From positions 1 to 64,000 of the IMG/VR virus record IMGVR_UViG_3300044701_000569: DNA of 64,000 nt; one strand, 5' to 3'. Positions within the stretch are counted from its first letter, which is position 1. Every line of letters starts with the position of its first letter. Shown here piece after piece: positions 11,426 through 23,997 of the stretch. Both the position numbers and the translations under genes were made by a program. The notes under the pieces were generated by a model, which saw only the letters and a list, made by a program, of their open reading frames with translations, did not search any database and had not been told where the DNA came from.

Positions 11426-11530
11426 TGTGGATAAGTCTGTGGATCGAGTTATGCACAGGCTGTTGTGGATAACTCAGCTGTGGATAACTTTGGTGTTGCG
11501 AAAATGCCACTGTGGATAAGCTGTGGATAA
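11426..11530. promoter_or_regulatory. Cluster of DnaA boxes
   Basis: TGTGGATAA (reverse complement of TTATCCACA) at 11426, 11464, 11479, 11511, 11522; TTATGCACA at 11449; degenerate TGTGGATCG at 11438. Confidence 0.85.
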
Positions 11531-11541
11531 CTCTGGGAGTG

Positions 11542-11613
11542 TAACCTGTTGATTCTAAAGACGTTTTTCACCCGTTCTTTCGATTTAAAAACTCTATATA
11601 AATCAATGACTTA
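11542..11613. promoter_or_regulatory. Two IHF consensus sites (WATCAANNNNTTR)
   Basis: 11542-11554 minus strand AATCAACAGGTTA; 11601-11613 plus strand AATCAATGACTTA. Confidence 0.7.
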
Positions 11614-11718
11614 GCGGCGAGACCTCAGCTAGAACATGAAGTCTTTCAGCTGCGGCGAATGGTTGACATTTGGGTGCTGTCGTGTATAATAGAGACTTAG
11701 TTAGACAATTGAGGAGCC

Positions 11719-11880
11719 ATGATGCCTAAATTTTATTACACACAGACTGTGACATATACCTTACAGGTTGACGCAGACACAGCAGAAGCAGCAGACGAGA
11801 TTGCTGGAATGACCGATGTAAACTCTGCGGGAGTTAATGCCACCTACGAGGGCTGGGAAGAAGACGGTTACGCAGAATAA
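11719..11880 (+). CDS. Small acidic early protein (53 aa, not in ORF track)
   Basis: GAGGAG SD, own promoter; MMPKFYYTQTVTYTLQVDADTAEAADE...GYAE. Confidence 0.7.
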   Translation: MMPKFYYTQTVTYTLQVDADTAEAADEIAGMTDVNSAGVNATYEGWEEDGYAE

Positions 11881-11943
11881 TTTGGTTGACATTTGGGTGC
11901 TGTCGTGTATAATACTAGTATGTTCAACGGAGAGGGCACTAAA

Positions 11944-12186
11944 ATGGACTATGACATCGAGTTTATTAATACTACCGACTCAACTGTAGACTATAGCGAG
12001 CGAGCTATAGCAGAGTTCGAGAGGGGCATGGGGGATCGTATTGAGGTGTATACAGAGCAGTTCGAAAGCGACTGCGGGTTAGAACTGTGCGACGCAGACG
12101 ACATCGGCGGGCTCATTGTATACAGTGCAGAGGGAGCTCTGCGAGCAGTATACGACTATGAGAACTTCTGCGGGTGGCTCGTTTAA
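11944..12186 (+). CDS. Acidic early hypothetical protein
   Basis: Own promoter, GAGGGCA leader. Confidence 0.75.
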   Translation: MDYDIEFINTTDSTVDYSERAIAEFERGMGDRIEVYTEQFESDCGLELCDADDIGGLIVYSAEGALRAVYDYENFCGWLV

Positions 12187-12287
12187 ACGGGTGCAGAGGG
12201 GTGTGGCATAATAGCCACACTCTTTTTGGTTGACACGGTGCCAGAATCGTGTATAATAAGAACATAGGGCAACAGAAAGAGGGTGTT

Positions 12288-12545
12288 ATGGCAAAGACTT
12301 ATCGTTTCGTAGGGGTAAGCAACCTTAACGGTCGCTGGGCTGTTCGCTATGCCAACGAGCGGACTCGTGCGCGGGTTCTGCAGAAGAACGGGCATACGGA
12401 CGTGAAGCTGTGGGATTTGAAGGAAGCTCTGCGAGCAGAAGACCTCGTGGACGAGCTGCTCAACAAGGTTGGGCGTGGTGAGATTCTGGGCTCTGCTCGT
12501 GAAGCTGTCCTGGACGAAGCTCGCAGAATCGGCTTTGCGGTCTAA
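12288..12545 (+). CDS. Early hypothetical protein, paralog of 13475-13765
   Basis: Shared G.S.LNG....R(Y/F)AN....VL..NGHT.(V/I)KL pattern. Confidence 0.75.
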   Translation: MAKTYRFVGVSNLNGRWAVRYANERTRARVLQKNGHTDVKLWDLKEALRAEDLVDELLNKVGRGEILGSAREAVLDEARRIGFAV

Positions 12546-12616
12546 AAAAGAGGTTGACATTTGGGATCTTGGTGCTATACTAAGAGCATAGGGCAAACGA
12601 ACTGAGAGGGCAAACG

Positions 12617-13342
12617 ATGTTCAAACTGTTATCAACAGCGAATCCAAAAATCCAAAAAGGTACCAAGGAAGGCTATCTCAGCTTCATCCTGCACCTTGCT
12701 CCTGCTGATTTGAGCGGGCGTGAAGTCTGCGCCAAGCGGACCGCGGGTTGCACGGCAGCATGTCTCAACACCGCAGGGCGTGGTGGCATGTTCCGCAAGG
12801 GCGAGAACACCAACGTTATTCAAAAGGCACGTATTCGCAAGACCAAGTACTTCTTTGAGAATCGTGAAGCTTTCATGAGCGATCTTGTAGAAGACATCAT
12901 GCGAGCTGTGAACTATGCACGCCGCAAGGGCTTGACTCCCGTGTTTCGTTTGAATGGTACTAGTGACCTTGCTTGGGAGAAGTACCCAGTTCCCAACATG
13001 GGCAAGAACATCTTTGACACGTTCAGCACTCTTCAGTTCTACGACTACACCAAGATCCTGGGCCGTAAGACGAAGGATATTGACAATTACCACTTGACAT
13101 TCTCAGCCGCGGACGGTAACGACGCAGATGTTGAGCGGGCTGTGGCTCAGGGCATGAATGTCGCTGTGGTGTTTGATCGTCTGCCCGAGAATTATATGGG
13201 CAAGACTGTATTCAACGCAGACGATACGGATCTGCGCTTTTTGGATCCTAAGGGCGTGGTGCTTGGACTCAAAGCCAAGGGCCGTGCTAAGAAGGACACT
13301 TCGGGCTTCGTGCGCCGAGTGATTCCCCTGAGTGTTGCATAA
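12617..13342 (+). CDS. GP88-like phage protein (Cys-rich, CxxxxxxCxxxC)
   Basis: LHLAPA, CAKRTAGCTAACLNTAGRG, RLNGTSD, FYDYTK, NYHLTFS, DLRFLD, GLKAKG. Confidence 0.7.
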   Translation: MFKLLSTANPKIQKGTKEGYLSFILHLAPADLSGREVCAKRTAGCTAACLNTAGRGGMFRKGENTNVIQKARIRKTKYFFENREAFMSDLVEDIMRAVNYARRKGLTPVFRLNGTSDLAWEKYPVPNMGKNIFDTFSTLQFYDYTKILGRKTKDIDNYHLTFSAADGNDADVERAVAQGMNVAVVFDRLPENYMGKTVFNADDTDLRFLDPKGVVLGLKAKGRAKKDTSGFVRRVIPLSVA

Positions 13343-13474
13343 GTGCCACACTTTGGGGGTGGGCAATGGTGCCCAAAATATATGGTTGACACAATCCAAA
13401 AACCATGTATAATTTGAATATGAGCTGCGGGAACAGGTTCCAAAGCCATAAACTATGCACAAGGAGCATAAGAA

Positions 13475-13765
13475 ATGTCTAAGACGTTTACAATCGCTGG
13501 TACTTCCAGCCTCAATGGTAAGGTGAAGTTTCGTTTCGCTAACGGCACGATCAAGCATCGTGAGCAGGTGTTGACCCGCAACGGTCACACCGGGATCAAG
13601 CTCTATGAGCTGCCCTCTGCTATGGACAAGGACGCTGCTCGCTCCTTTGTCGAGAGCCAGGCTATCATGGCTCCCACTGTAACGGCTGAGGCTGTAGTGG
13701 CTGCAAAGCCCGCTCGAGCTCCAAAGGTCACAGTGCCTGCGGACGCAGAAGACGCTCTCATGTAA
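13475..13765 (+). CDS. Early hypothetical protein, paralog of 12288-12545
   Basis: AAGGAG SD; shared motifs. Confidence 0.75.
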   Translation: MSKTFTIAGTSSLNGKVKFRFANGTIKHREQVLTRNGHTGIKLYELPSAMDKDAARSFVESQAIMAPTVTAEAVVAAKPARAPKVTVPADAEDALM

Positions 13766-13885
13766 AGAGCAGTGGGGTGTGGCAGCAATGCCACACTCTT
13801 TTATAATGGCATCTTTTGGTTGACAATCTGCCCAAAGGTGCTATTATATAAGAGTGTTCAACAAACCATTGAGAGGGCAATCCAT

Positions 13886-14362
13886 ATGGAAACCGTTACA
13901 CTGCGGGGCGAAGACTTTCGTACAATCCACAACACGCTCTGCGAGCTGCGCGGCCTTGTAGAACGCATGACCCATTCGATCGTTAAGATCGATGACGTGC
14001 AGGACATCATCACCAAGTTCGAGTACGGGCTGAAGGACGCCTACGATCAGGACAGTTCAGCCTTTGATCGCAAGATGGACCACTACAGTGCTGTCAAAGA
14101 AGCAGAAAGCTTTCGCACAGTATGGAGCATCTTCACAGTGGAAGACCTGTACGAAGAGCATCCCTACAAGGACGCAGACACCATTGTCTACGAGAACCAC
14201 TGGGGCACCAGTCCCATCCGTGTAAGCTTCAAGGGCCGTCGTTGGGTAGATCTGTATGCTGCTGCGAACGCTGCGATCTGCACTTCGGGCGATGCTCATC
14301 ACATCTTTATCGAGCAGTTTACCCCCTTTGGGCGCGATCTAGTGCTGCAAACGGGCAGCTAA
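13886..14362 (+). CDS. Early hypothetical protein
   Basis: Promoter plus GAGGGCA leader; C-terminal GDAHHIFIEQF. Confidence 0.75.
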   Translation: METVTLRGEDFRTIHNTLCELRGLVERMTHSIVKIDDVQDIITKFEYGLKDAYDQDSSAFDRKMDHYSAVKEAESFRTVWSIFTVEDLYEEHPYKDADTIVYENHWGTSPIRVSFKGRRWVDLYAAANAAICTSGDAHHIFIEQFTPFGRDLVLQTGS

Positions 14363-14454
14363 GTCGTTGATCTAGAACAGGAATCTTTTTGGTTGACAAA
14401 TGGATTCCTGATGCTATAATAAGAACATAGGGTAAACAGAAAGAGGGTAATCAA

Positions 14455-14697
14455 ATGTCAAAAGTAGAACTTCGCAGCTTCGAAATCACTCCTGCAGAGC
14501 GTCGCCTCGCTGAGATCGGGCGCGGCATGATGGATGCTGCTGTGACCTGCAAGGACGATGCAGAGAGCAATCATCTTGCAGAGTGCGGTCACAAGCTCTG
14601 CGCTTTCAATGCGCCATATGGCACCACAATCAAGGACTTCACCGCTGAAGACAATGCGCTGATCCGTAAGTTCCTGGAGGGTGGTTATGCTTCTTAA
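14455..14697 (+). CDS. Early hypothetical protein
   Basis: Promoter plus AGGGTA leader. Confidence 0.75.
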   Translation: MSKVELRSFEITPAERRLAEIGRGMMDAAVTCKDDAESNHLAECGHKLCAFNAPYGTTIKDFTAEDNALIRKFLEGGYAS

Positions 14698-14899
14698 GTA
14701 TTGTGACTTCATCGCAGATCGTGTGCGAAAAGGACTCGTGAACTCGATGAACGACAGTCTAGAGCCTGTGCGTCTCAAGGACGTGGGCTCTGTAAAATGG
14801 GATTTGGGTCCGCAGGGTGAGTTTCGCTCAACCGCTAAGAGTCTTTTGGTTGAGGACGCCTACGGATCCAAATATAAGATCACGATTGAAGAAATTTAA
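14687..14899 (+). CDS. Early hypothetical protein
   Basis: GGAGG SD; overlaps the upstream stop. Confidence 0.6.
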   Translation: MLLKYCDFIADRVRKGLVNSMNDSLEPVRLKDVGSVKWDLGPQGEFRSTAKSLLVEDAYGSKYKITIEEI

Positions 14900-14998
14900 T
14901 CTTAGGGGTTGACAACCCCTAACTGTGGCCTTATAATAAGACATACTGAGGGAATAGGTATTCCCGAAGGTACTTCTACAATAAAAGGAAAAGGCATA

Positions 14999-15280
14999 AT
15001 GAAGCGATTTAATCCAGAAACCAAGACCTTCAAGGTCTTCAATGCACTCTACAACGGTGACAAGCTCACAGCGGCTCAGGCTGCAAAGCGTTTTGGCGTT
15101 GGCAATCTTGCTGCTGAAGCAAGCCGCATCCGCCAGTCAGGCTATGCTGTCTATGCTAACCAGCGTACCGCAGGCAACGGTGTAACCGTTACTGAGTATG
15201 AGATGGGTCAGCCCAGCCGCGAGATCGTTGCTCTCGGCTACAAGGCCAAGGCAGCAGGTCTTACCCTAGACACCATCTAA
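14999..15280 (+). CDS. Winged helix-turn-helix DNA-binding protein (putative)
   Basis: LTAAQAAKRFGVGNLAAEASRIRQSGYAVY followed by beta-hairpin-like YEMG. Confidence 0.65.
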   Translation: MKRFNPETKTFKVFNALYNGDKLTAAQAAKRFGVGNLAAEASRIRQSGYAVYANQRTAGNGVTVTEYEMGQPSREIVALGYKAKAAGLTLDTI

Positions 15281-15397
15281 GGTGCTCAAGAGTGTGGCAG
15301 AAATGCCACACTCTTATATAATAGCATCATTTATGGTTGACAAGCGCCTAGATGATGCTATTATATAAGAGTGTTCAACAAAGACAGAGGGCAAACA

Positions 15398-15688
15398 ATG
15401 TCAAATCGTGTTACAAGGGCAGTAGAACAGATCTACCAAATGGACGCCAACGAACTGAATCAAGTCGTTGAAGCAATCAAACTCAAACGCACCAGCCTAG
15501 CCCGTCAGGCTACTCGCTCCGTGATCATCGGCGATACTGTGAGCTTCGAAGCTCGCGGACGCATGGTTGTGGGCAAGGTCACCAAGGTGAACATCAAGAC
15601 GCTCACAGTTCGTGAAGACCGCAATGGTTCAGTCACCAACTGGAAGGTGTCCGCTACACTCGTCAACAAAGTAACCGTAGGAGCCTAA
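15398..15688 (+). CDS. Early hypothetical protein (SH3-like C-terminus)
   Basis: IGDTVSF...GKVTKVN.KT..V...WKV. Confidence 0.7.
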   Translation: MSNRVTRAVEQIYQMDANELNQVVEAIKLKRTSLARQATRSVIIGDTVSFEARGRMVVGKVTKVNIKTLTVREDRNGSVTNWKVSATLVNKVTVGA

Positions 15689-15689
15689 T

Positions 15690-16256
15690 ATGCCTAATTG
15701 GTGCAATAATTCCGTTACCATCACTCACACTGACACTGCCAAGATGCAGGCCCTTGTGGCCGCTGTCAACGAAGGCAAGTTCTGCGATCATGTGATTCCT
15801 ACTCCGCAGGATCTCACTGACACTGTGTCAGGATCCGTGCCTGAGGGGCCTGAGCGTGAAGCTCATGAAGCTCAGATGAAGCGTAACCTAGAGCTCTACG
15901 GAGCCAAGGACTGGTATGACTATCAGGTTTCCAACTGGGGGACCAAGTGGGATGTTCAGCCCTACGACACTGTTGAGCTGGAAGACGGCACTGTCTCCTT
16001 TGGCTTTGACAGTGCTTGGAGCCCGCCCATTGGAGTCTACACCATGCTGGTTGAACAAGGGTTCACTGTCAAGGCTTTCTACTACGAGCCAGGCATGTGC
16101 TTTGCTGGTGTATGGGAAGACGGCATTGATGAGTTCTACGAGCTGGACGGTATGTCTTCTGATGAAGTAGCCAACACGATCGATCGCGAGTTGGACGAGG
16201 TCATGGGCATCTCAGAGAGCATGGCTGAATACGAAGAAGAAAACATCGAAGAATAA
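15690..16256 (+). CDS. DUF1281/YubB ferredoxin-like domain protein
   Basis: MPNWCNN, WYDY...NWGTKWD, FDSAWSPP, YYEPG..FAG. Confidence 0.75.
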   Translation: MPNWCNNSVTITHTDTAKMQALVAAVNEGKFCDHVIPTPQDLTDTVSGSVPEGPEREAHEAQMKRNLELYGAKDWYDYQVSNWGTKWDVQPYDTVELEDGTVSFGFDSAWSPPIGVYTMLVEQGFTVKAFYYEPGMCFAGVWEDGIDEFYELDGMSSDEVANTIDRELDEVMGISESMAEYEEENIEE

Positions 16257-16314
16257 TGGTTGACAGCACCCTACGGGGTGCTATAATGAGCATATGAACA
16301 GCAAAGAGGGTATC

Positions 16315-16527
16315 ATGTCAAAAGAGATCTTGTTTGAAGACCTTGCAGAACAGCTGGCGCTGCTCAGCGACGAGGATCGTGCAGAGTTTGCTCAGTTCCT
16401 TGTAGAGAACTATCTACACGCCGCAGCGGGCTTGGCTACAGACATTGGACACGCTGAGATGGATCTAGAGTATTCTGCTCACGACACTTTTGAAGCGTAT
16501 CAAAGACGCGAGAACATATTCACATAA
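16315..16527 (+). CDS. Early acidic hypothetical protein
   Basis: Promoter plus GAGGGTA leader. Confidence 0.7.
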   Translation: MSKEILFEDLAEQLALLSDEDRAEFAQFLVENYLHAAAGLATDIGHAEMDLEYSAHDTFEAYQRRENIFT

Positions 16528-16544
16528 AGAGTAAATAACATCAC

Positions 16545-16621
16545 GCTCCTATAGCTCAATTGGTTAGAGCACCGGACTCATAATCCGTAGGTTCACAGTT
16601 CAAGTCTGTGTGGGAGCACCA
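16545..16621 (+). tRNA. tRNA with CAT anticodon, probably Ile2 (lysidine, reads AUA); elongator Met not excluded
   Basis: Acceptor GCTCCTA/TGGGAGC, anticodon loop CTCATAA, GTTCAA T-loop, encoded CCA; C4-G69 and C5-G68 pairs as in TilS substrates. Confidence 0.85.
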
Positions 16622-16624
16622 AAT

Positions 16625-16707
16625 GTCCGCGTGGTGGAATAGGTAGACACAAGAGACTTAAAATCTCTCGCTTAGGCGTGCCGGTTCGAGTCCGGCCGCG
16701 GATACCA
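16625..16707 (+). tRNA. tRNA-Leu(TAA)
   Basis: Acceptor GTCCGCG/CGCGGAT, AGAGA-CTTAAAA-TCTCT, long variable arm, CCA. Confidence 0.92.
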
Positions 16708-16785
16708 AGGCTAAGTATATGAACAAGACCAGTCAAGGTTATAAGAAGTATATACAAAAGATGAACTATCAACAGTTTATCAAAT

Positions 16786-16863
16786 CTGCCCGTAGCTCAG
16801 CAGGATTAGAGCAACAGCCTTCTAAGCTGTGGGTCGGGGGTTCGAATCCCTCCGGGCAGGCCA
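16786..16863 (+). tRNA. tRNA-Arg(TCT)
   Basis: Acceptor CTGCCCG/CGGGCAG, ACAGC-CTTCTAA-GCTGT, GGTTCGAATCC, CCA. Confidence 0.92.
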
Positions 16864-16890
16864 TTACCCCCAAAGCCAAACAGTAATACC

Positions 16891-17070
16891 ATGCCTCGCA
16901 TACCAACTAGTCGGATTCCTGACGACTGGGACTCCTACGACGATGATGAGCTAGATCTTAACCTAGAAGAGGAACGGGAGCGCAGAGAGCGCAAACGAAC
17001 CAAGCAAGACGCTGATGAGGACCAACAGCGCAGGGATTCGTGGCGCAAAAGCAACACCAAACGCAGCTAA
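16891..17070 (+). CDS. Small charged hypothetical protein (59 aa, not in ORF track)
   Basis: MPRIPTSRIPDDWDSYDDDE...NTKRS. Confidence 0.45.
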   Translation: MPRIPTSRIPDDWDSYDDDELDLNLEEERERRERKRTKQDADEDQQRRDSWRKSNTKRS

Positions 17071-17161
17071 GTCATTGATTCTAATAGAGAATCTTTTTGG
17101 TTGACAAGATCCCGTGTTCGTGTATAATAAGAACATAGGGCAAACAAACAAAGAGGGCAAT

Positions 17162-17440
17162 ATGATAGAACGCAAAGACTACACCGTAGAGGTTTACAAG
17201 GCAGACAAGCGCACCAAAGCAGGTGAGCGCCTTGTGCTCAAGCAGGATCACACAGACATCGATCTGCAGACACTGCGTCATCTTTATCTTACCACTTGGT
17301 TCAAGAACGACGGCTACCGCCATGAGTTCCACGAGACTTATGTAACCCGCACCAACATGATGGGTGGTAAGGAGTATCAGGAACGCTATGACACTCCTCG
17401 CTACTGCTCACCCAGCTCTGAAGCCTACTGGAGCATGTGA
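17162..17440 (+). CDS. Early hypothetical protein
   Basis: Promoter plus double AGGGCA leader; C-terminal TPRYCSPSSEAYWSM. Confidence 0.8.
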   Translation: MIERKDYTVEVYKADKRTKAGERLVLKQDHTDIDLQTLRHLYLTTWFKNDGYRHEFHETYVTRTNMMGGKEYQERYDTPRYCSPSSEAYWSM

Positions 17441-17441
17441 T

Positions 17442-17669
17442 TTGAGGACTGATGACATCCTACAATGGACAGGGGCGGTGTTCATCATCGCTGGACACGC
17501 CCTCAACGCCGTGGGCCCGGGTGCCCACCCGTGGAATATCCTGGCTTTCTTCCTGGGTACTATAGCATTCTTTATCTGGACTGTCCGTGTTGCAAATAAG
17601 CCGCAGATGGCTGTGAATGTGGTAGCCCTAGGGCTAGGAGCACTGGGTCTAGTAAAATCAATGACTTAA
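17442..17669 (+). CDS. Small membrane protein (about 3 TM)
   Basis: Hydrophobic; start uncertain (TTG). Confidence 0.55.
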   Translation: MRTDDILQWTGAVFIIAGHALNAVGPGAHPWNILAFFLGTIAFFIWTVRVANKPQMAVNVVALGLGALGLVKSMT

Positions 17670-17755
17670 CAGACCAAAAAAGTTTCAAAAAAGTGGTTGA
17701 CATTTGGGCGCACCCGTGTATAATAAGAACATAGGGCAAACAGAAAGGGCATACA

Positions 17756-17974
17756 ATGATCAAGCAAGTCGCAAAGGTAGCTGTAATTGGTACGCTGATG
17801 TTCAGCGGTACGCTGTTCGCAATGGACTACGCTTTCAGCATTCCAATTGTCAACAAGAGCTTCAGCACCAACCAATGCGTGTCTGTGGATAACTATCCGG
17901 GCTTAGTGTTTGGCAAGGCTGTATACTCCTGCGAGAACATGCCTGAGAAGTATGAGCTGAACTGGGTAAAATAA
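17756..17974 (+). CDS. Early membrane-anchored hypothetical protein
   Basis: Promoter plus leader; N-terminal hydrophobic helix. Confidence 0.7.
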   Translation: MIKQVAKVAVIGTLMFSGTLFAMDYAFSIPIVNKSFSTNQCVSVDNYPGLVFGKAVYSCENMPEKYELNWVK

Positions 17975-18042
17975 TGGTTGACAGCGCCTGCAGAGGTGCT
18001 ATACTAAGAACATAGGGCAAACAAACAGAGAGGGCAAAGCAA

Positions 18043-18510
18043 ATGGCAACACGAAGCACAATCGCAATGGAATTCGCAGACGGTACTGTCCAGCAGATCT
18101 ACTGCCACTGGGACGGCTACCTTTCCAATAACGGGCAGATCCTGCTCCAACACTATTCAGATCCTTTCAAAGTTCGTGAGTTGATCGACGGCGGCGCTGT
18201 TAGTTCGCTACGCCCTGAGATTGGCACCAAGCATGCGTTCAGCCAGTTTGAGGCTAAGGGCCAACCCTACGACGCAAAGCTCTACGAAGACATGACTACG
18301 TTTTACGCTCGCGATCGTGGCGAGGACTTGGTCAAAAACAAGTTCAAGGACTTTGCGGACTACCGCAAGAACGCACAGAGCGAGGAATACAATTATATCC
18401 TGCGCCGTGACGGCAATTGGTACGTGGAGTTCTACGGCGAGTTTGACGGCTTGCTGACTAAGGCTATTATGGACGAACAGGATCGCGAAGCACAAGAGGA
18501 GATAGCGTAA
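18043..18510 (+). CDS. Early phage protein with MATRS...IYCHWDGY motif
   Basis: Promoter plus double AGGGCA leader. Confidence 0.8.
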   Translation: MATRSTIAMEFADGTVQQIYCHWDGYLSNNGQILLQHYSDPFKVRELIDGGAVSSLRPEIGTKHAFSQFEAKGQPYDAKLYEDMTTFYARDRGEDLVKNKFKDFADYRKNAQSEEYNYILRRDGNWYVEFYGEFDGLLTKAIMDEQDREAQEEIA

Positions 18511-18683
18511 TGGCTATCTGTCCAGAGTGCATGGAAGAGAAGAGCATCCTTGCTAGTCGCTGTCCTCACTGCACTCAGGACATTGGTTATGGTAGACAGA
18601 TCCTTGCGATGTGTGTATACTACGGAGCAATCGTGTTGACTATGACATTTTTGGTTGTGCTGCTCAAGGCATGTAGTGGTTGA
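18510..18683 (+). CDS. Zinc-ribbon plus TM small protein (57 aa, not in ORF track)
   Basis: CPEC...CPHC then hydrophobic tail; stop TGA lies inside the next TTGACA. Confidence 0.65.
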   Translation: MAICPECMEEKSILASRCPHCTQDIGYGRQILAMCVYYGAIVLTMTFLVVLLKACSG

Positions 18684-18738
18684 CAGCAGAGCTAGATCGT
18701 GTATAATAGTGAAACATTCAACAGAAAGGGCAAAGGGC

Positions 18739-19761
18739 ATGAGTAAGACAATCCGTTTTATCGAAGGTACGTATAAGATTCGCGGCAACGACACTTCAGT
18801 TGCTGGATTGGTATTTCCTCTAGTAGAGGAATTCAAGGTAGGTACGGGCGGTGGCTACGTCACAGTGGATGGTAGTTCTGTGGCAGGCTTCCCGGATCGC
18901 AACATTAAGATCCGTTGCGAAGGTGCCGAGTCATACGAAACAGTGGACTCGAAGGTAGCCACCGCCCAGGCCAAGAGCCGTGTTGAGACTGATGAGCAGA
19001 TCATTGAACGACTGCGCGATCGTTTCAGCATGCTGGAGGAGATGACCAAAGCCTGTAAGAAGGGCGATGTGCGAGCTATGATCGTATCAGGTCCTCCGGG
19101 CGTTGGTAAGAGTCACGGTGTTGAGAAGGTGTTGGGCAAGCACGACCTGCTCGCTGACATCGCTAACGACTCAAAGTTCAAGAAGTACGAAGTGGTCAAG
19201 GGTGCTATGAGCGCCATTGGACTCTACTGCAAGCTGTTTCAGTATGCGGACAAGGATAACGTTATCGTGTTCGATGACTGCGATAGTGTGCTGTTGGACG
19301 ACCTCAGCTTGAACATTCTCAAGGCTGCTCTAGACTCTAAGAAGTCGCGTCGCATTCACTGGAACACCGACAGCTATAAACTGCGCAACGAAGGTGTGCC
19401 GGACAGCTTCGAGTTCAAGGGCTCAGCTATCTTTATCACCAACATCAAGTTCGATAACGTTAAGAGCAAGAAGCTCCGTGATCACCTTGAAGCTCTTGAG
19501 AGCCGTTGCCACTACATTGACCTGACCATTGATACAGAGCGTGAGAAGATGCTCCGCATCAAGCAGATCACTAAAGACGGCATGCTCTCTGAGTACGGCC
19601 TTAGTGAGGAAGTCCAAGACGAAATTGTGGACTTCATCGATCTTAACAAGAAGCGACTACGGGAACTGTCATTGCGTACAGTACTAAAGGTTGCCGATCT
19701 AGCCAAAGCATTCCCCTCTAAGTGGGAAGCTATGGCGGAGAATACTGTGATGAAGCGGTAA
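18739..19761 (+). CDS. AAA+ family ATPase
   Basis: Walker A GPPGVGKS, Walker B VIVFDDCD, sensor IFITN, ALESR arginine finger; leader AAAGGGCAAAGGGCATG. Confidence 0.85.
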   Translation: MSKTIRFIEGTYKIRGNDTSVAGLVFPLVEEFKVGTGGGYVTVDGSSVAGFPDRNIKIRCEGAESYETVDSKVATAQAKSRVETDEQIIERLRDRFSMLEEMTKACKKGDVRAMIVSGPPGVGKSHGVEKVLGKHDLLADIANDSKFKKYEVVKGAMSAIGLYCKLFQYADKDNVIVFDDCDSVLLDDLSLNILKAALDSKKSRRIHWNTDSYKLRNEGVPDSFEFKGSAIFITNIKFDNVKSKKLRDHLEALESRCHYIDLTIDTEREKMLRIKQITKDGMLSEYGLSEEVQDEIVDFIDLNKKRLRELSLRTVLKVADLAKAFPSKWEAMAENTVMKR

Positions 19762-19906
19762 GCCCTCCCGCTCACAGTACGGGCTCAGCAAGCCCTAGGA
19801 CATGCCCTCGTCCACCCGCTGAGCCCTAAAGAGCAGACAATCGTGTGCCCTCACGCTCTGCTCTTTGCGCCCGGACAGTGTGCCCTCGCTGTCCGGGTAT
19901 TTTTTT
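19743..19906 (+). ncRNA. Candidate four-hairpin structured RNA with GCCCU(C) loops, ending in an intrinsic terminator
   Basis: Stems 19743-19779, 19781-19826, 19828-19866, 19869-19898, each with a GCCCU-containing loop; T-run at 19900-19906. Confidence 0.7.
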
Positions 19907-19914
19907 CTCTGCAA

Positions 19915-19950
19915 AATCAATGACTTACAGCATAGGCTAAGTCATTGAAA
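19915..19950. promoter_or_regulatory. Inverted pair of IHF-like sites
   Basis: AATCAATGACTTA 19915-19927 and TAAGTCATTGAAA 19938-19950. Confidence 0.6.
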
Positions 19951-20040
19951 TCATTGAGGATTTTTTCTAAAAAAAGTGGTTGACATTTGGGCGCACCCGT
20001 GTATAATAAGAACATAGGGCAAACAAGAGGAGCAGCGTAC

Positions 20041-20232
20041 ATGGGCTACAGGATCATCAACGTTACACCAGAGTTCCGCGCACAATGGGAACCCAGAGTA
20101 GGTTTGGAAGGTCCGTTCTTCTACGAAGGCAACCGTGTGCTCTACTATGATGCCCGCGAAGGCAAGTACCTTAATCCCCAGACAGATATGTACCTCACCT
20201 ACGAAGAGTATGATGAGATCGCAAAGCAATAA
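20041..20232 (+). CDS. Early hypothetical protein
   Basis: GLEGPF...VLYYD.REGKY motif; own promoter. Confidence 0.75.
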   Translation: MGYRIINVTPEFRAQWEPRVGLEGPFFYEGNRVLYYDAREGKYLNPQTDMYLTYEEYDEIAKQ

Positions 20233-20301
20233 AAGTGGTTGACACGGATCCAAAACCGTGTATAATAAGAACATAGGGCAAACAAACAAGAGGGCAAACA
20301 A

Positions 20302-20637
20302 ATGGCAATGATCGTAATCCGCACCCAGTACATGGAAAACTATGGCGCCCACGATTGGGACGGCACTGGTGAGTGCCCGCAGTACTGGAAGTTCAAGGGC
20401 GGCTCGGAGTACAAGATCACCAACATCGACATCAACGGTGATCTGCAGGCTGCGGTGCGAGCTGCGGCTGTGGAACGCGACAACGACTACTGCCGCGAAT
20501 ACATCCTGGATTGGAGTGTGGAGGGGGACGACTACCTCAGCCAGTTCGAGCGTCAACAGCTGGAGTACGAGGGCAAGATTGACTGCCTTGAGCCCACTAT
20601 GGGCTATCGTGAGCTGCTGGAGACTCAGCCCGCATAA
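20302..20637 (+). CDS. Early hypothetical protein
   Basis: TQYMENYGAHDWDG.GECPQYWKFKGG; own promoter. Confidence 0.8.
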   Translation: MAMIVIRTQYMENYGAHDWDGTGECPQYWKFKGGSEYKITNIDINGDLQAAVRAAAVERDNDYCREYILDWSVEGDDYLSQFERQQLEYEGKIDCLEPTMGYRELLETQPA

Positions 20638-20709
20638 AAAGAATTGGTTGACAGGAACCCAAAATCCTGTATAATAAGAACATAGGGCAACAGAACAGAG
20701 GAGCACAGT

Positions 20710-21105
20710 ATGGATTGGGACAACATGATCAACACGCAAGAGGGATTGGCTCGCATGGTGGGCAAGACCTTTGTGAGCGTGAGCGGTGGCCGAGGCGACG
20801 GCGAGATGGAGTTCCGTACTGCTGACGGTGAGATCTTCCTGTTCAGCCACTACCAGGACTGCTGCGAATCCGTTAGTATCGAGGACGTCTGCGGTGACAT
20901 CCGGGACTTGGTGGGCGAGCCCATCCTCCTAGCTGAAGAAGTGTCGGGAGAAGCTCCTGCATCCGATGAGGATCACTGGGGCTCACAGACCTGGACCTTC
21001 TACAAGTTCGCTACCCGCAAGGGCTATGTGGACGTTCGCTGGCTGGGTGAATCCAACGGATATTACTCAGAGTCAGTGGATATGTACTATCAGGGTGTGG
21101 CATAA
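20710..21105 (+). CDS. Early hypothetical protein
   Basis: HYQDCCESV, WTFYKFATRKGYV.VRW.G.SNGYYSE. Confidence 0.8.
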   Translation: MDWDNMINTQEGLARMVGKTFVSVSGGRGDGEMEFRTADGEIFLFSHYQDCCESVSIEDVCGDIRDLVGEPILLAEEVSGEAPASDEDHWGSQTWTFYKFATRKGYVDVRWLGESNGYYSESVDMYYQGVA

Positions 21106-21183
21106 AAGCCACACCAAAAGTGGTTGACAGATTGGCACTAGGTGCTATACTAAGAACATAGGGCAAACAGAAAGGGCAATTAA

Positions 21184-21435
21184 ATGGACAAAGAACAGTT
21201 TGAACGTGATCCCCGGGACTATGCGCTGGACATGGTCAATGAGGGAATGGTCGATCCTATGCTGCTGCTCCAAGCAGCTCTGAATTGGATGAGCCACGAT
21301 GAGGTCCGCGAGATGTTGGACGCTAACGAACTCAGCCCGCGCTTCTCAGAGGATGAAGACGATGAGGATGAGGACGAAGAGTGGACTCCGGACAATGCAG
21401 ACTTCAACGATCCCGGCTCACGCCACCACTACTAA
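21184..21435 (+). CDS. Highly acidic early protein
   Basis: Own promoter; D/E tract. Confidence 0.75.
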   Translation: MDKEQFERDPRDYALDMVNEGMVDPMLLLQAALNWMSHDEVREMLDANELSPRFSEDEDDEDEDEEWTPDNADFNDPGSRHHY

Positions 21436-21441
21436 GGAGCG

Positions 21442-21669
21442 ATGATGATTAGAGAGCATATTCAAATGGAAACACGCCACGGCAGTCCTTATGATCGTGG
21501 TTCAGCAGACTCATACTACCGCAGGAAGCGCAGTCCTCACTACTATGTGGGCGACACTGGTACTTCAGAGCGTGTCACCCTCAAGGACATGACACCCGAT
21601 GAGGTCGAAGCCTATCACGCAGGCTACGATGACAACGAAGAAGCTGACAACCACAAGGAGTGGTTGTGA
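21442..21669 (+). CDS. Early hypothetical protein
   Basis: AAGGAG SD; RHGSPYDRGSADSYY motif. Confidence 0.75.
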   Translation: MMIREHIQMETRHGSPYDRGSADSYYRRKRSPHYYVGDTGTSERVTLKDMTPDEVEAYHAGYDDNEEADNHKEWL

Positions 21670-21773
21670 TGACTAGATTCGCAGAGTTCATCCTAGCTAC
21701 CTTTGCGGGTAGGATCGTACTGTTTGGAATGATTGTGGCCAGTCTTTGGACCTATCGTCTAATTTCTGGTTGA
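21669..21773 (+). CDS. Single-TM micro-protein (34 aa, not in ORF track)
   Basis: MTRFAEFILATFAGRIVLFGMIVASLWTYRLISG; stop inside the next TTGACA. Confidence 0.5.
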   Translation: MTRFAEFILATFAGRIVLFGMIVASLWTYRLISG

Positions 21774-21830
21774 CAAGAGTTCAAAAGGTGCTATACTAAG
21801 AACATAGGGCAAACACAAAGGGCAAACACC

Positions 21831-22157
21831 ATGCAAGACATTTTCAGCTTCATCGAAGACACCAATGACCAACTGCGCCGCTTGGTGCATGAAATGGAAT
21901 ACGTCCCTGCGGACAGCCTGGGCTTGGATCGTCGTGCCGCTTACCGCCTGTGGGTCAACGACGACTGCATCATCGTTGACAAGGGCAACGACCGCACCCT
22001 GCAGTACTACGGTGGGTTCGAGTATGTGGACAAGGAGTACCGCATTGAGATGGGTGACTATGTGATCTACCTCTCAGATGACGATCGTGTACAGGGACAC
22101 ATTGACACCCACTATCAGCGCGATGAAGAGGGTGTTTACACGGACGAAGACGCTTAA
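21831..22157 (+). CDS. Early acidic hypothetical protein
   Basis: Own promoter plus leader. Confidence 0.75.
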   Translation: MQDIFSFIEDTNDQLRRLVHEMEYVPADSLGLDRRAAYRLWVNDDCIIVDKGNDRTLQYYGGFEYVDKEYRIEMGDYVIYLSDDDRVQGHIDTHYQRDEEGVYTDEDA

Positions 22158-22169
22158 CCAAGGAACGAT

Positions 22170-22433
22170 ATGAATACAGTGATGATGACAATGGTGCGCC
22201 CCACGGTGCTGTTTGATGTGCTGAATCCACAGCACCGTGAGTGGGCCTATCAGTTCTTAGAACAGAAGAGCTGGCGTGACTGCCCAGTGATGTTCGCTCT
22301 CCCCCAAAGCGAGCCCTCGGTGTACACCATGATCACACGTGAGCTGAGCCACTATTACCTAAAGCAGGAGTTCCAACAGAAGCCCTGCCCTGTTGTAAAA
22401 ATACAACAGAAGTTTAAGGTAAAAAATGGTTGA
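22170..22433 (+). CDS. Hypothetical protein
   Basis: AAGGA SD; stop inside the next TTGACA. Confidence 0.65.
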   Translation: MNTVMMTMVRPTVLFDVLNPQHREWAYQFLEQKSWRDCPVMFALPQSEPSVYTMITRELSHYYLKQEFQQKPCPVVKIQQKFKVKNG

Positions 22434-22504
22434 CAGGGTTCCAAAATCCTGTATAATTAAGATGTAGGGCAAAAAAACTGTAACACGTAACACTAGGGGG
22501 CTAT

Positions 22505-22888
22505 ATGACAAAAGTAAATTATGACCGTTTCGCCAGCTTCGATCTCAACGAGTGCTGTGACTACTTTGACTCAGAGAAGCAGAGCAACTGGAAGAAGATC
22601 GGCAAGTTCATCGTAGCCGATGGACAGGAGTACGTAGAGGTCATGGAGCAAGAGTTTGACTTTGAGGACACTACAGACTCAGAGTACTCAGCATTTGAAG
22701 CGGGCGTCAAGTATGCGCTCACCAAGATGAACATTGCCCTGGAGGCCGCGGGCATAGACGTACAGGTCTGCGAAGTGGACCTCGTAGAGAGCATGGGCTT
22801 TATGATGGTGCGTTGCGATGACGAGCCCGAGGACTTTGTAAAGCGAGCTCTCAAGAAGCCCGTGCCCCAGGTAGAGAGCTGGGTCTAA
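22505..22888 (+). CDS. Early acidic hypothetical protein
   Basis: Own promoter. Confidence 0.75.
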   Translation: MTKVNYDRFASFDLNECCDYFDSEKQSNWKKIGKFIVADGQEYVEVMEQEFDFEDTTDSEYSAFEAGVKYALTKMNIALEAAGIDVQVCEVDLVESMGFMMVRCDDEPEDFVKRALKKPVPQVESWV

Positions 22889-22988
22889 GAGCCCGGGGTG
22901 TGGCATAAAAGCCACACCAAAAGTGGTTGACAGGAACCCAAAATCCTGTATAATAAGATACATAGGGCAAACACAAAGGGCAAAGCAA

Positions 22989-23261
22989 ATGAACATTTCC
23001 ACTCTTGAGCAGTACGTAGATCAGAAGAACCGCTGGGGCGCAATCTTTGGCTCCAAACCGTTGAGTCTGCTGAACAGCCAGGACCGCCAGGCTATCGCAG
23101 ACTCACTGGACTCAGACCTAAGCCCAGAGAATGTGAGCTGTGACGGAGAGATCCAAGGACGAGCTCTGATCCAGAAGCGCAACTATCTGATCCGTGCCGC
23201 ACGTGAACTCCACAGCATTGACCCTTCAGTTCGTATGTACGAAGCTGAGGGTTGGTTCTAA
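22989..23261 (+). CDS. Early hypothetical protein
   Basis: LSPENVSCDGE motif; own promoter. Confidence 0.75.
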   Translation: MNISTLEQYVDQKNRWGAIFGSKPLSLLNSQDRQAIADSLDSDLSPENVSCDGEIQGRALIQKRNYLIRAARELHSIDPSVRMYEAEGWF

Positions 23262-23339
23262 CTAGGGGTTGACACGAGTCCAAACTCGTGTATAATTAGA
23301 ACTGTAGGGCAAACAAACACACACGAAAGGGCAAACACT

Positions 23340-23669
23340 ATGATTACAGCACAGCAGATTGAGCAGGGCATCACGCTCGCACAGCAGGCTTCACAGCAGT
23401 TCTTCCAGCAGAAGCTGGGTGGACAGGACCAGTACGCCTGTGGCTTTGCTTGGGTAGATGTGTACGTGGATCGCACTAACTCTAAGCAGGCCAAGGAACT
23501 CTTAGCCGCAGGCTTCCGCAAGGACTACAAGCCCAAGTGCCTCTCAATGTGGAACCCAGGTGGCTTGGGTGTGCAGAACGTGGACACCAAAGAAGCGGGT
23601 GCGGACGCTATGGCACAGTACCTCAGAGCACTGGGCTTGAATGCCTACGCAGGCTCACGCTTAGATTAA
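23340..23669 (+). CDS. Early hypothetical protein
   Basis: ACGFAWV...Q....KEAGA.A.A..L...G..AY..SRLD. Confidence 0.8.
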   Translation: MITAQQIEQGITLAQQASQQFFQQKLGGQDQYACGFAWVDVYVDRTNSKQAKELLAAGFRKDYKPKCLSMWNPGGLGVQNVDTKEAGADAMAQYLRALGLNAYAGSRLD

Positions 23670-23710
23670 AAAAAGACGCACTCTCTGCAACACGCCTGAG
23701 AGTCCCTCTT

Positions 23711-23741
23711 CCCCGATCGGCAACGGTCGGGGTTTCTTTTT
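23711..23741 (+). terminator. Intrinsic terminator closing the early island
   Basis: CCCCGATCG-GCAA-CGGTCGGGG followed by TTTCTTTTT. Confidence 0.85.
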
Positions 23742-23997
23742 GAAAAAATTTTTGAGACGAGGGGTGAGGGGTATACAAATTTATTTGTTGCGCAAAAGCC
23801 ACAATGCTTAATGACCTCTTTCTCTCTACAATTCTCTACAATTCTCTCCGTTTTCTAACCACGCTTTTAAAAATTGGGTGATGCAGAATCACCACCTCAC
23901 TTCTATAAGTACTTCCCTATAAAAAAATGCGCGGCAATTTTTTTTGGGCTAGTACCCCATTTCGGGTAACTATATATAATAACAACTGCTCTACACT

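What the first reader, a model, noticed from the sequence alone, without database searches (positions are those of the whole stretch)
11494..23803. Ten copies of an 18-bp operator-like palindrome TGT(G/T)GC-N6-GC(C/A)ACA within the early island
Seen at 11494 (TGTTGC-GAAAAT-GCCACT, inside the DnaA cluster), 12202, 13333, 13778, 15293, 17039 (CGTGGC-GCAAAA-GCAACA), 21096, 22391 (TGTTGT-AAAAAT-ACAACA), 22899 and 23786. Eight lie 10-45 bp upstream of a -35 box; the other two bracket the island. The spacer is always 6 nt and A-rich. Half-sites vary independently (TGTTGC paired with GCCACA at 13333 and 23786), which breaks RNA pairing and favours recognition by a dimeric DNA-binding protein. A few copies (13778, 15293, with GNRA loops and T-runs) could also act as terminators. 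Inference: binding site for a host or phage regulator; the wHTH protein at 14999 is one candidate.
Basis: partly seen in the sequence, partly recalled or inferred. Interest (0 to 1): 0.65.

Follow-up and report, generated by a model that had tools for sequence, protein, structure and literature searches.

The report
Conserved dyad in phage promoter cassettes
An 18-bp inverted repeat that sits between early genes of an uncultured 358-kb freshwater phage is real, is shared by well over a hundred related viral contigs, and behaves partly as a transcription-terminator hairpin and partly as a sequence-specific DNA site, inside terminator-plus-promoter cassettes like those known from T4-type phages.

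Summary
The motif exists at all ten coordinates. TGTKGY-N6-RCMACA occurs 8 times in the window against 0.07 expected. Eight copies lie 10-44 nt upstream of near-perfect sigma-70 promoters.

The window is the first 64 kb of a 357,559-bp tailed phage. Related viral contigs carry the same motif in the same kind of early region.

There are two classes of copy:
- **Terminator-like copies.** Their flanks extend the stem and a T-run follows. They keep pairing by compensatory change and use G.U only on the sense strand, so they look like real RNA terminators.
- **Other copies.** These are the majority. Many lie 9-11 nt from the -35 box. Often they cannot pair, yet they keep TGT.G./.C.ACA, which points to recognition as DNA.

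The motif travels with the 3' end of the upstream gene, above all a highly conserved HTH_39 winged-helix gene (14999-15280). It does not travel with the downstream promoter.

The layout of stem-loop, strong early promoter, small shuffled genes matches PeSL cassettes of T4-type phages. The geometry (TGT-N12-ACA centred near -54) resembles P2 Ogr sites, but no Ogr homologue is present.

Best reading (about 0.45): a protein-read dyad built into PeSL-like cassettes that doubles as a terminator apex. No binder is shown.

The parts
11494..11511 (+). Marginal copy (TGTTGC-N6-GCCACT) between DnaA boxes. It does not fold better than shuffles.
12195..12226 (+). 13-bp hairpin with the dyad 12202-12219 at its apex and G.U pairs in the lower stem. 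A T5 run follows, then the -35 box after 10 nt. Terminator-like. It starts 9 nt after the stop at 12186.
   Evidence: -19.7 kcal/mol, z -4.6
13324..13359 (+). Long imperfect hairpin around the dyad 13333-13350 (TGTTGC/GCCACA, U.C mismatch). It overlaps the stop codon at 13342, has no T-run, and lies 35 nt from the -35 box.
   Evidence: -19.1, z -2.8
13774..13799 (+). 11-bp hairpin (dyad 13778-13795, GCAA tetraloop when the A-U pair closes it) followed by TTTTATAAT. Terminator-like. It starts 9 nt after the stop at 13765 and lies 24 nt from the -35 box.
   Evidence: -18.7, z -4.1
14999..15280 (+). Gene for a 93-aa HTH_39 winged-helix protein. It is the candidate binder and the best-conserved early gene.
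15288..15315 (+). 12-bp perfect hairpin (dyad 15293-15310, GAAA loop) 8 nt after the wHTH stop. The tail is T-poor. It lies 26 nt from the -35 box. The position is conserved in relatives.
   Evidence: (-20.8, z -6.2)
17039..17056 (+). Marginal copy (CGTGGC/GCAACA), not a hairpin, 44 nt from the -35 box and downstream of the tRNA cluster.
21094..21115 (+). 8-bp hairpin (dyad 21096-21113) with no T-run. The stop codon of the upstream gene lies in the loop. It is 10 nt from the -35 box.
   Evidence: -18.8, z -4.3
22390..22409 (+). 8-bp A/U-rich hairpin (dyad 22391-22408, TGTTGT/ACAACA), inside the 3' end of ORF 22170-22433 and 21 nt from the -35 box.
   Evidence: -10.8, z -3.7
22897..22918 (+). 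8-bp hairpin (dyad 22899-22916). The 37-nt stretch from the hairpin's first base through the -35 box plus one base is identical to that at 21096. No T-run. It lies 10 nt from the -35 box.
   Evidence: -19.9, z -4.0
23786..23803 (+). Copy with unpairable halves (TGTTGC/GCCACA) at the far edge of the island, after the terminator at 23711-23732. No consensus promoter follows.
11663..23296 (+). Early island: 22 near-perfect sigma-70 promoters (TTGACA-16/17-TATAAT) on the plus strand. Most are followed by a conserved leader (AAGAACATAGGGCAAACA...AGAGGG). Each drives one or two small genes. Eight of the 22 carry the dyad upstream.

Best explanation
The 18-bp dyad TGTKGY-(A/T-rich N6)-RCMACA is the sequence-specific core of the stem-loop half of PeSL-like terminator-promoter cassettes. 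These cassettes punctuate the early region of this jumbo phage and its freshwater relatives.

**Shown**
- Every copy lies between the stop of one small early gene and the -35 box of the next consensus sigma-70 promoter.
- Where the flanks extend the stem and a U-run follows, the copy has every feature of an intrinsic terminator and evolves by compensatory change.
- The other copies, which are the majority in relatives, often cannot pair. They still keep the same eight bases and the same two-state choices at positions 4 and 6.

**Inferred**
- Base identity is therefore selected on double-stranded DNA, most simply by a dimeric phage-encoded protein.
- The best candidate is the HTH_39 winged-helix protein, whose gene is almost always followed by a copy.
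- In copies 9-11 nt from the -35 box, the dyad centre falls near -54. This assumes a start 7 nt after the -10 hexamer. That is where RNA polymerase alpha-CTD and activators such as P2 Ogr work, so a bound protein could tune or shut off those early promoters, or block read-through.
- The sign of any such effect is unknown.
For: 1. **Enrichment and clustering.** 8 hits against 0.07 expected. The hits are confined to early regions.
2. **Occurrence in relatives.**
   - The exact dyad followed by N8-GGTTGACA is found in 23 IMG/VR stretches, each with a full -10 box.
   - Clusters of 7-9 copies lie in the early regions of G002 and G005.
   - 222 copies occur in 901 kb around wHTH homologues.
3. **Position.** Among 463 non-redundant strong promoters, there are no copies at gap 0-8 and a main peak at 9-11 with 26 copies.
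4. **Two classes.**
   - Terminator-like copies (n=19): positions 4/4' pair in 19 of 19 (p=0.001) and the core is pairable in 18 of 19.
   - Other copies (n=81): 36 have an unpairable core. At gap 9-11, 14 of 24 are unpairable, positions 4/4' show no association (p=0.40), and none is terminator-like.
5. **Wobble asymmetry.** The stems of terminator-like copies hold about 30 G.T/T.G cells against 1 C.A. Other copies have 17 C.A against 10 T.G at position 6, plus 15 T.C and 13 G.A at position 4.
6. **Internal control.** In aligned orthologous spacers downstream of the wHTH gene, the separate true terminator changes sequence by compensation. The dyad keeps TGT.G./.C.ACA without pairing.
7. **Linkage to the wHTH gene.**
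   - 43 of 44 distinct contexts have a copy.
   - The wHTH is 68-85% identical across genomes in which other early proteins are 33-73% identical.
   - HTH_39-like genes of 30-36% identity sit next to motif clusters in other clades. The family is found in only 3 of 50,697 cultured-phage records.
8. **Not a host regulon.** 2 composite hits in 596 Gb of prokaryote genomes.
9. **Cassette architecture and shuffled gene order** match PeSLs.
Against: - No binding was measured or could be modelled. The homodimer job gave no verdict.
- In this genome seven of ten copies are simply good hairpins.
- Motif presence follows the upstream gene, not the downstream promoter. That fits a 3'-end element better than a classical operator.
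- The contig G024 (169 kb, wHTH 81% identical) has no motif cluster.
- The mixed half-sites could be recombination chimeras between hairpin variants.
- The 10-nt spacing could be a relic of a compact 'hairpin, T-run, GG, -35 box' cassette, as seen in G008.
- The promoters are already consensus and need no activator.
- Ascertainment: the loci were collected either through the motif or through the wHTH gene.
Confidence: 0.45

Rival explanations
1. A pure PeSL stem-loop family. On this reading the dyad is only the apex of terminator or RNA-stabilising hairpins. Its sequence is kept by common descent, cassette mobility and gene conversion. Unpairable copies are recombination chimeras or decaying relics with no function, and no protein reads the sequence.
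For: - The architecture is identical to PeSLs.
- Seven of ten local copies are stable hairpins, and two or three have U-runs.
- Terminator-like copies show covariation and sense-strand wobble.
- The motif tracks the upstream gene's 3' end.
- Early gene order is shuffled between genomes.
- Compact 'hairpin, T6, GG, -35 box' cassettes in G008 would explain the 10-nt gap.
- The half-site types are mutually compatible variants that crossing-over could mix.
Against: - Other terminators in the same spacers drift freely by compensation, while the dyad keeps its bases without pairing.
- About 80% of copies are perfect and few are one or two mismatches off, unlike neutral decay.
- The dyad is retained next to the wHTH gene even where a separate terminator has taken over.
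- The same 12 bases recur in clades that differ in G+C (39-52%) and in flanking sequence.
Confidence: 0.33
2. An RNA hairpin read by an RNA-binding factor, in the manner of boxB/N antitermination or a processing or stability signal. The conserved apex and A-rich loop would be recognised on the transcript.
For: - Loops are A-rich, and some are GNRA once closed by an A-U pair (13778, 15293).
- The spacer is A-rich on the sense strand in 75 of 100 copies.
- The copies lie at the 3' ends of genes.
Against: - 36 of 81 copies that are not terminator-like cannot form the stem.
- There is no sense-strand wobble preference in that class.
- 20 of 100 copies have T-rich spacers, and the flanked element occurs in both orientations.
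Confidence: 0.08
3. An operator for a host transcription factor with a TGT-N12-ACA site, for example a PpsR/CrtJ-like or TyrR-like regulator that the phage has co-opted.
For: TGT-N12-ACA is the PpsR/CrtJ consensus. The motif is shared by phages of different G+C content.
Against: - The composite is essentially absent from 185,579 prokaryote species genomes.
- PpsR sites come in pairs 8-9 nt apart, which is not seen here.
- The inner bases GGC/GCC are also conserved, and that is not part of those consensus sequences.
- The host is unknown.
Confidence: 0.05

Closest known systems
PeSL (promoter-early stem-loop) cassettes of T4-type phages (Arbiol et al. 2010, PMC2839356; Comeau et al. 2014, PMC4122927)
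   Same: - A stem-loop lies just upstream of a near-perfect sigma-70 early promoter, followed by a Shine-Dalgarno sequence and a start codon.
- The cassettes are repeated between small, mostly unknown genes in a plastic region.
- Some of the stem-loops are terminators.
- Gene order is shuffled between relatives.
   Different: - PeSL stems are described by loose consensus only (GN-loop-CN; A3-4G3-loop-C3T3-4).
- Here 12 specified bases are kept across clades, and they are kept even in copies whose halves cannot pair.
- The phage is a 358-kb uncultured freshwater virus, not a classified T4-like phage.
- Mini-circle formation and recombination at the cassettes were not tested.
Ogr/delta activator sites of P2/P4 late promoters
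   Same: Both are a TGT-N12-ACA inverted repeat centred at about -55 from the start site. The copies here that lie 10 nt from the -35 box centre at about -54 (inferred).
   Different: - No Ogr_Delta (PF04606) protein is encoded in the genome.
- P2 late promoters depend on the activator, whereas these are consensus early promoters.
- Many copies here lie at other distances.
PpsR/CrtJ operators of purple bacteria
   Same: The TGT-N12-ACA palindrome.
   Different: PpsR operators are host photosynthesis promoters with paired sites 8-9 nt apart. No such pairing is seen here, and no host regulon was found.
Intrinsic (Rho-independent) terminators
   Same: 12202 and 13778 here, and 19 non-redundant copies in relatives, have G+C-rich extended stems and a U-run, with covariation.
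   Different: Most copies lack the U-run or cannot pair. The apex sequence is conserved, which termination alone does not require.
DNA uptake sequences placed as inverted pairs in terminators (Neisseria, Haemophilus; from memory, not checked here)
   Same: A motif selected for a DNA-level reason doubles as a terminator stem.
   Different: The biology is different (uptake as against phage early transcription). This is an analogy only.

Membership tests
PeSL cassette | Stem-loop immediately upstream of a strong sigma-70-like early promoter, followed by a Shine-Dalgarno sequence and a start codon | tested here: met
   Eight dyads lie 10-44 nt upstream of TTGACA-16/17-TATAAT promoters that carry a conserved leader.
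PeSL cassette | Clustered among small, variable genes, with gene content and order differing between relatives | tested here: met
   small ORFs; the order of G000 homologues in G002 is scrambled.
PeSL cassette | The stem-loop is an effective transcription terminator | tested here: inconclusive
   Only 12202 and 13778 have a stem plus a T-run. RNA-library contigs cannot show 3' ends.
PeSL cassette | Recombination between cassettes (mini-circles, indels at the cassettes) | not tested
   One DNA contig carries a 141-nt insertion at the promoter at 14412-14447. This was not analysed further.
Ogr/delta-type activator site | TGT-N12-ACA dyad centred near -55 | tested here: met
   Met for the gap-10 copies 12202, 21096 and 22899 and the gap 9-11 peak. 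The start site is inferred, not mapped.
Ogr/delta-type activator site | Cognate Ogr_Delta zinc-finger protein is encoded | tested here: not met
   no PF04606 match in the 357,559-bp genome at E <= 1.
Ogr/delta-type activator site | Activator-dependent promoter | tested here: not met
   The -35 boxes are perfect TTGACA. That P2 late promoters have a poor -35 box comes from memory and was not checked here.
PpsR/CrtJ operator | Two TGT-N12-ACA palindromes 8-9 nt apart in host photosynthesis promoters | tested here: not met
   The copies here are single. Only G019 has two, and those are 27 nt apart.
Intrinsic terminator | G+C-rich hairpin followed by a U-run, with pairing kept by covariation | tested here: met
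   Met for a subset only: 12202 and 13778 here, and 19 non-redundant copies in relatives.
HTH_39 winged-helix protein (14999-15280) | Pfam PF14090 score above the gathering threshold, and a winged-helix fold | tested here: met
   25.7 bits against a cut-off of 21.3. The AlphaFold2 model shows three helices, a beta wing and a C-terminal helix, with pLDDT 79.5. Foldseek gave only weak, generic winged-helix matches.

The most novel reading that the evidence does not exclude
A small, extremely conserved phage winged-helix protein (HTH_39) reads one 18-bp dyad that serves two purposes: a DNA site about 54 nt upstream of early promoters, and the apex of the early genes' terminators. If so, one early protein would set both initiation and read-through across a whole array of mobile promoter-terminator cassettes in a very abundant clade of uncultured freshwater jumbo phages.
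Probability: 0.22. Interest if true: 0.7.

Novelty: new variant of a known kind. Interest (0 to 1): 0.55.

Why it matters
PeSL cassettes have been described only in cultured T4-type phages, and only as loosely conserved stem-loops.

Here the same design appears in a large, abundant clade of uncultured freshwater phages. At least 165 viral contigs and about 2,500 protein clusters carry the linked wHTH gene. The stem-loop also has a strict sequence core that survives without pairing.

If a protein reads that core, three things follow:
- It gives a handle on early-gene timing in phages that have no cultured host.
- It is an example of one sequence under both RNA-structure selection and DNA-recognition selection.
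- It provides a compact, portable terminator-operator-promoter module that runs on a host-type sigma-70 promoter.

If no protein reads it, the finding still extends PeSL-type modular shuffling well beyond the T4-like phages.

Tried and rejected
- **Ogr/delta family:** absent from the genome.
- **wHTH homodimer prediction:** no verdict (score 0.15 against a mark of 0.32). This is evidence neither for nor against binding.
- **Sequence search of solved structures with the wHTH:** no hit.
- **Foldseek against the PDB:** only weak, generic winged-helix rows, best E 9e-3.
- **Exact search for the conserved 5' leader in viral contigs:** nothing. The leader is specific to this genome.
- **Near-identity DNA search of cultured phages:** only the tRNA-Arg matched.
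- **wHTH in cultured phages:** only distant hits in Pelagibacter phage HTVC008M and Stenotrophomonas phage DLP_6. I did not follow these up for the motif.
- **Reads:** One metatranscriptome run holds contigs on the island, including one that crosses the 12202 hairpin. Contigs cannot show transcript ends or exclude DNA carry-over, so this gives no evidence on termination.
- **GGCACTCC box:** the box that flanks the dyad in relatives is not a feature of this genome.
- **Palindrome around the -35 box of the wHTH promoter (14902-14922):** not conserved in relatives.
- **Protein atlas search for the paralogous early proteins 12288/13475:** nothing usable.
- **Literature on HTH_39:** nothing functional.
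- **Rejected resemblances:** CRP, NtcA, LexA, NtrC, Fis and DnaA-box similarities were considered from memory and dropped, because spacing or bases do not fit.

Full report
**1. What the window is**

The window is the first 64 kb of a single 357,559-bp contig with 39% G+C. It encodes a large terminase subunit, a tail tube protein, a UvsX-like recombinase, and DnaB-like and other helicases. It is therefore a tailed jumbo phage.

No cultured phage is close at the DNA level; only a tRNA-Arg gene matches. Public runs that hold the early region are freshwater and lake metagenomes, plus several runs labelled fungus metagenome.

**2. The island**

Between 11663 and 23296 the plus strand carries 22 near-perfect sigma-70 promoters (TTGACA, 16-17 nt, TATAAT). 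The consensus scan found 40 promoter-like sites on both strands of 9-26 kb, against 16.4 expected. Most of the 22 are followed by a conserved leader and a Shine-Dalgarno sequence. Each drives one or two small genes, mostly without known families. Three tRNA genes sit in the middle of the island.

**3.

- All ten sites are as written.
- TGTKGYN6RCMACA occurs 8 times in the window against 0.07 expected.
- Genome-wide, the five exact TGTGGC-N6-GCCACA copies all lie in the island. The degenerate form adds five copies at 274.5-292.5 kb, three of them upstream of minus-strand promoters of the same type.
- Eight island copies lie 10-44 nt upstream of a -35 box.
- 11494 and 17039 each miss an otherwise invariant outer base. 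Together with 23786, they do not fold better than shuffled sequence.
- The other seven are stable hairpins, at -10.8 to -20.8 kcal/mol.
- The hairpins begin 8-9 nt after a stop codon or overlap it.
- 12202 and 13778 are followed by T-runs. 21096 and 22899 are identical over the 37 nt from the hairpin's first base through the -35 box plus one base, and have no T-run.

**4. The motif is shared with relatives**

- An exact search for the dyad plus N8-GGTTGACA found 23 stretches in IMG/VR. Each has a full -10 box that the search did not ask for.
- The same search over 596 Gb of prokaryote genomes found 2, about what chance gives. One of the two is a phage-like contig in a MAG that also carries the wHTH gene.
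- I fetched three large related contigs whole: G001 (363,943 bp), G002 (161,938 bp) and G005 (137,994 bp). They have the same dense arrays of consensus promoters and clusters of the dyad.
- The wHTH gene at 14999-15280 has 76-90% identical relatives on the 80 best of 165 matching viral contigs, and about 2,500 related protein clusters.
- The 80 loci fetched around it hold 222 dyads in 901 kb.

**5. Position relative to promoters**

I took 463 non-redundant strong promoters from these sequences, chosen without regard to the motif. About 93 have a perfect dyad within 50 nt upstream. None lies at gap 0-8. The main peak is at gap 9-11 with 26 copies. Lesser groups lie at 19-21, 23-26 and 34-35.

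One-mismatch and two-mismatch copies are few compared with perfect ones.

With a 16-17-nt promoter spacer and a start 7 nt after the -10 hexamer (an assumption), a gap of 10 puts the dyad centre at about -54.

**6. Two classes of copy**

I split 100 non-redundant promoter-associated copies by whether the flanks extend the stem by at least 3 pairs and at least 5 of the next 9 bases are T.

| | Terminator-like (n=19) | Other (n=81) | Other, gap 9-11 (n=24) |
|---|---|---|---|
| Positions 4/4' | pair in 19 of 19 (G-C 3, T-A 16; Fisher p=0.001) | 28 mismatched (G.A 13, T.C 15) | no association (p=0.40) |
| Core | pairable in 18 of 19 | unpairable in 36 | unpairable in 14 |

None of the gap 9-11 copies is terminator-like.

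Wobble use agrees with this split. The stems of terminator-like copies hold about 30 G.T/T.G cells and 1 C.A, so pairing is selected on the sense-strand RNA. The other copies have 17 C.A against 10 T.G at position 6, plus 15 T.C and 13 G.A at position 4.

One sequence therefore exists under two regimes: RNA pairing in one class, base identity without pairing in the other.

**7. An internal control**

Downstream of the wHTH stop codon, relatives show one of two arrangements.

- **Form a** (29 distinct sequences). The dyad is the apex of a clear terminator, with a G-rich lower stem and a T-run. The lower stem shows compensatory changes. The core shows T-A, T.G and C-G at position 6, and T-A to G-C at position 4.
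- **Form b** (12 distinct sequences). A separate terminator precedes the dyad, and the dyad has mismatched halves in 8 of the 12.

In an alignment of ten form-b spacers, the separate terminator changes its stem sequence by compensation, as terminators usually do. The dyad keeps TGT.G./.C.ACA, and its spacer and flanks vary.

This is the strongest argument that base identity, not pairing, is under selection in those copies.

**8. What the motif travels with**

I grouped promoters in two ways.

- **By the gene upstream.** Motif presence is nearly all-or-none: 43 of 44 contexts for the wHTH gene, then 8 of 9, 6 of 7, 4 of 4 and 3 of 4. Thirteen groups have none and three are intermediate.
- **By the gene downstream.** Most motif-bearing groups have it in under half of their members (10 of 14).

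So the dyad belongs to the 3' end of the upstream unit. It is not a stable part of the downstream promoter. This fits a cassette boundary, and it argues against a simple 'operator of gene X'.

The order of homologous early genes is scrambled between this genome and G002.

**9. The candidate protein**

- The 93-aa product of 14999-15280 matches Pfam HTH_39 above threshold.
- It models as a winged helix with an extra, invariant C-terminal helix, with mean pLDDT 79.5.
- Structural matches are only generic and weak: TFE, PadR, ArsR and MarR types.
- It is by far the most conserved early protein, at 68-85% identity against 33-73% for the others.
- The family is found in 3 of 50,697 cultured-phage records.
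- HTH_39-like genes of 30-36% identity lie within a few kb of dyad clusters in other contig types, G008/G020 and G019.

Against it:
- G024 (169 kb, wHTH 81% identical) and the related loci L135 and L136 have few consensus promoters and no dyad cluster.
- G003 and G004 carry one to three dyads but no HTH_39 in the parts held.
- The co-occurrence is largely shared ancestry, so it is a lead and not a test.

**10. Comparison with known systems**

- **PeSLs.** The architecture is that of PeSLs: a stem-loop just upstream of a near-perfect sigma-70 early promoter, among small variable genes, and implicated in shuffling (PMC4122927). The difference is the strict sequence core that is independent of pairing.
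- **Ogr/delta sites.** The geometry equals that of Ogr/delta sites: TGT-N12-ACA (PMC3931495), centred at about -55 and acting through the alpha subunit (PMC3152322). However, there is no Ogr_Delta protein, and the promoters here are consensus.
- **PpsR/CrtJ.** This shares only the TGT-N12-ACA outline.

**11. Verdict**

It is incomplete, because the element is also a genuine terminator hairpin in other copies, and because it is a cassette boundary and not a gene-specific operator.

I put about 0.45 on a protein-read dyad built into PeSL-like cassettes. The wHTH is the best but unproven candidate, at roughly 0.2-0.3. I put about 0.33 on a pure hairpin family kept alike by cassette mobility and recombination. 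Small weights go to RNA-level recognition and to a host factor.

**12. Limits**

- There is no host, no mapped transcript ends and no binding data.
- Relatives were gathered through the motif or through the wHTH gene.
- Redundancy was reduced by crude distance clustering, not by a tree.
- The start sites are inferred.
- The RNA-library contigs on the island cannot separate RNA from carried-over DNA.

Noticed in passing
window 11426-11530: Five perfect DnaA boxes (TGTGGATAA), all in one orientation, plus one near-copy. They lie in the divergent gap between the minus-strand genes and the first early promoter. 6 hits in the window against 0.7 expected. Similar boxes sit next to the first early promoter in G002 and G005 (L040, L041). 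This may be an origin or a DnaA-titrating site.
   Followed up: partly
window 11601, 14360(-), 17068(-), 17656, 19915, 19938(-): A second recurring upstream element, AATCAATGACTTA: 4 exact copies and 2 near copies, in both orientations. The pair at 19915/19938 forms an inverted repeat. Each lies roughly 20-55 nt upstream of the -35 box of early promoters that lack the dyad (17068 lies upstream of the same promoter as the marginal 17039 copy).
   Followed up: partly
window 11691-23330 (after each -10 box): A conserved 5' leader (AAGAACATAGGGCAAACA...AGAGGG) follows most of the 22 early promoters. An exact 18-mer from it has no match in IMG/VR, so the leader is specific to this genome.
   Followed up: partly
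window 14902-14922: A 9-bp-arm palindrome (TTAGGGGTT-GAC-AACCCCTAA) has the -35 box of the wHTH gene's own promoter at its centre. It is not conserved in relatives, whose wHTH leaders instead carry a GCTGA...TCAGC hairpin.
   Followed up: partly
L076-L155, just downstream of the wHTH stop (e.g. L082:10300-10400): Relatives, but not this genome, carry two further invariant boxes around the dyad: CCGATTCGCTCCCGGGG inside a stem, and CCGGCACTC before the next -35 box. The reverse complement of the second box, GGAGTGCC, flanks other dyad copies on the opposite side, so the flanked element occurs in both orientations. GGCCCCGCTG is another recurrent box.
   Followed up: partly
G000 274.5-293 kb (outside the window): A second early-type region on the minus strand has consensus promoters, tRNA genes and five more dyad copies. 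At 292534 a separate strong terminator directly precedes an unpairable dyad that lies 10 nt from the -35 box.
   Followed up: partly
window 12288-12545 and 13475-13765: Two paralogous small early proteins of 85 and 96 aa, with no family. Both lie downstream of dyad-bearing promoters, and the second is flanked by dyads on both sides. Homologues exist in G001, G002 and G005.
   Followed up: partly
window 14412-14447: A DNA contig from a lake metagenome (run X6) carries 141 extra letters at the early promoter at 14393-14420. This is a strain-level indel at a cassette, as PeSL shuffling would predict.
   Followed up: no
window 23826-23846: A short tandem repeat (CTCTACAATT, two copies) lies directly after the last dyad, in the non-coding stretch that ends the island.
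   Followed up: no
window 16545-16863: A tRNA-Met, tRNA-Leu, tRNA-Arg cluster sits inside the early island. The tRNA-Arg is about 90% identical to those of Ralstonia phage RsoM2USA and Pelagibacter phage Mosig.
   Followed up: no
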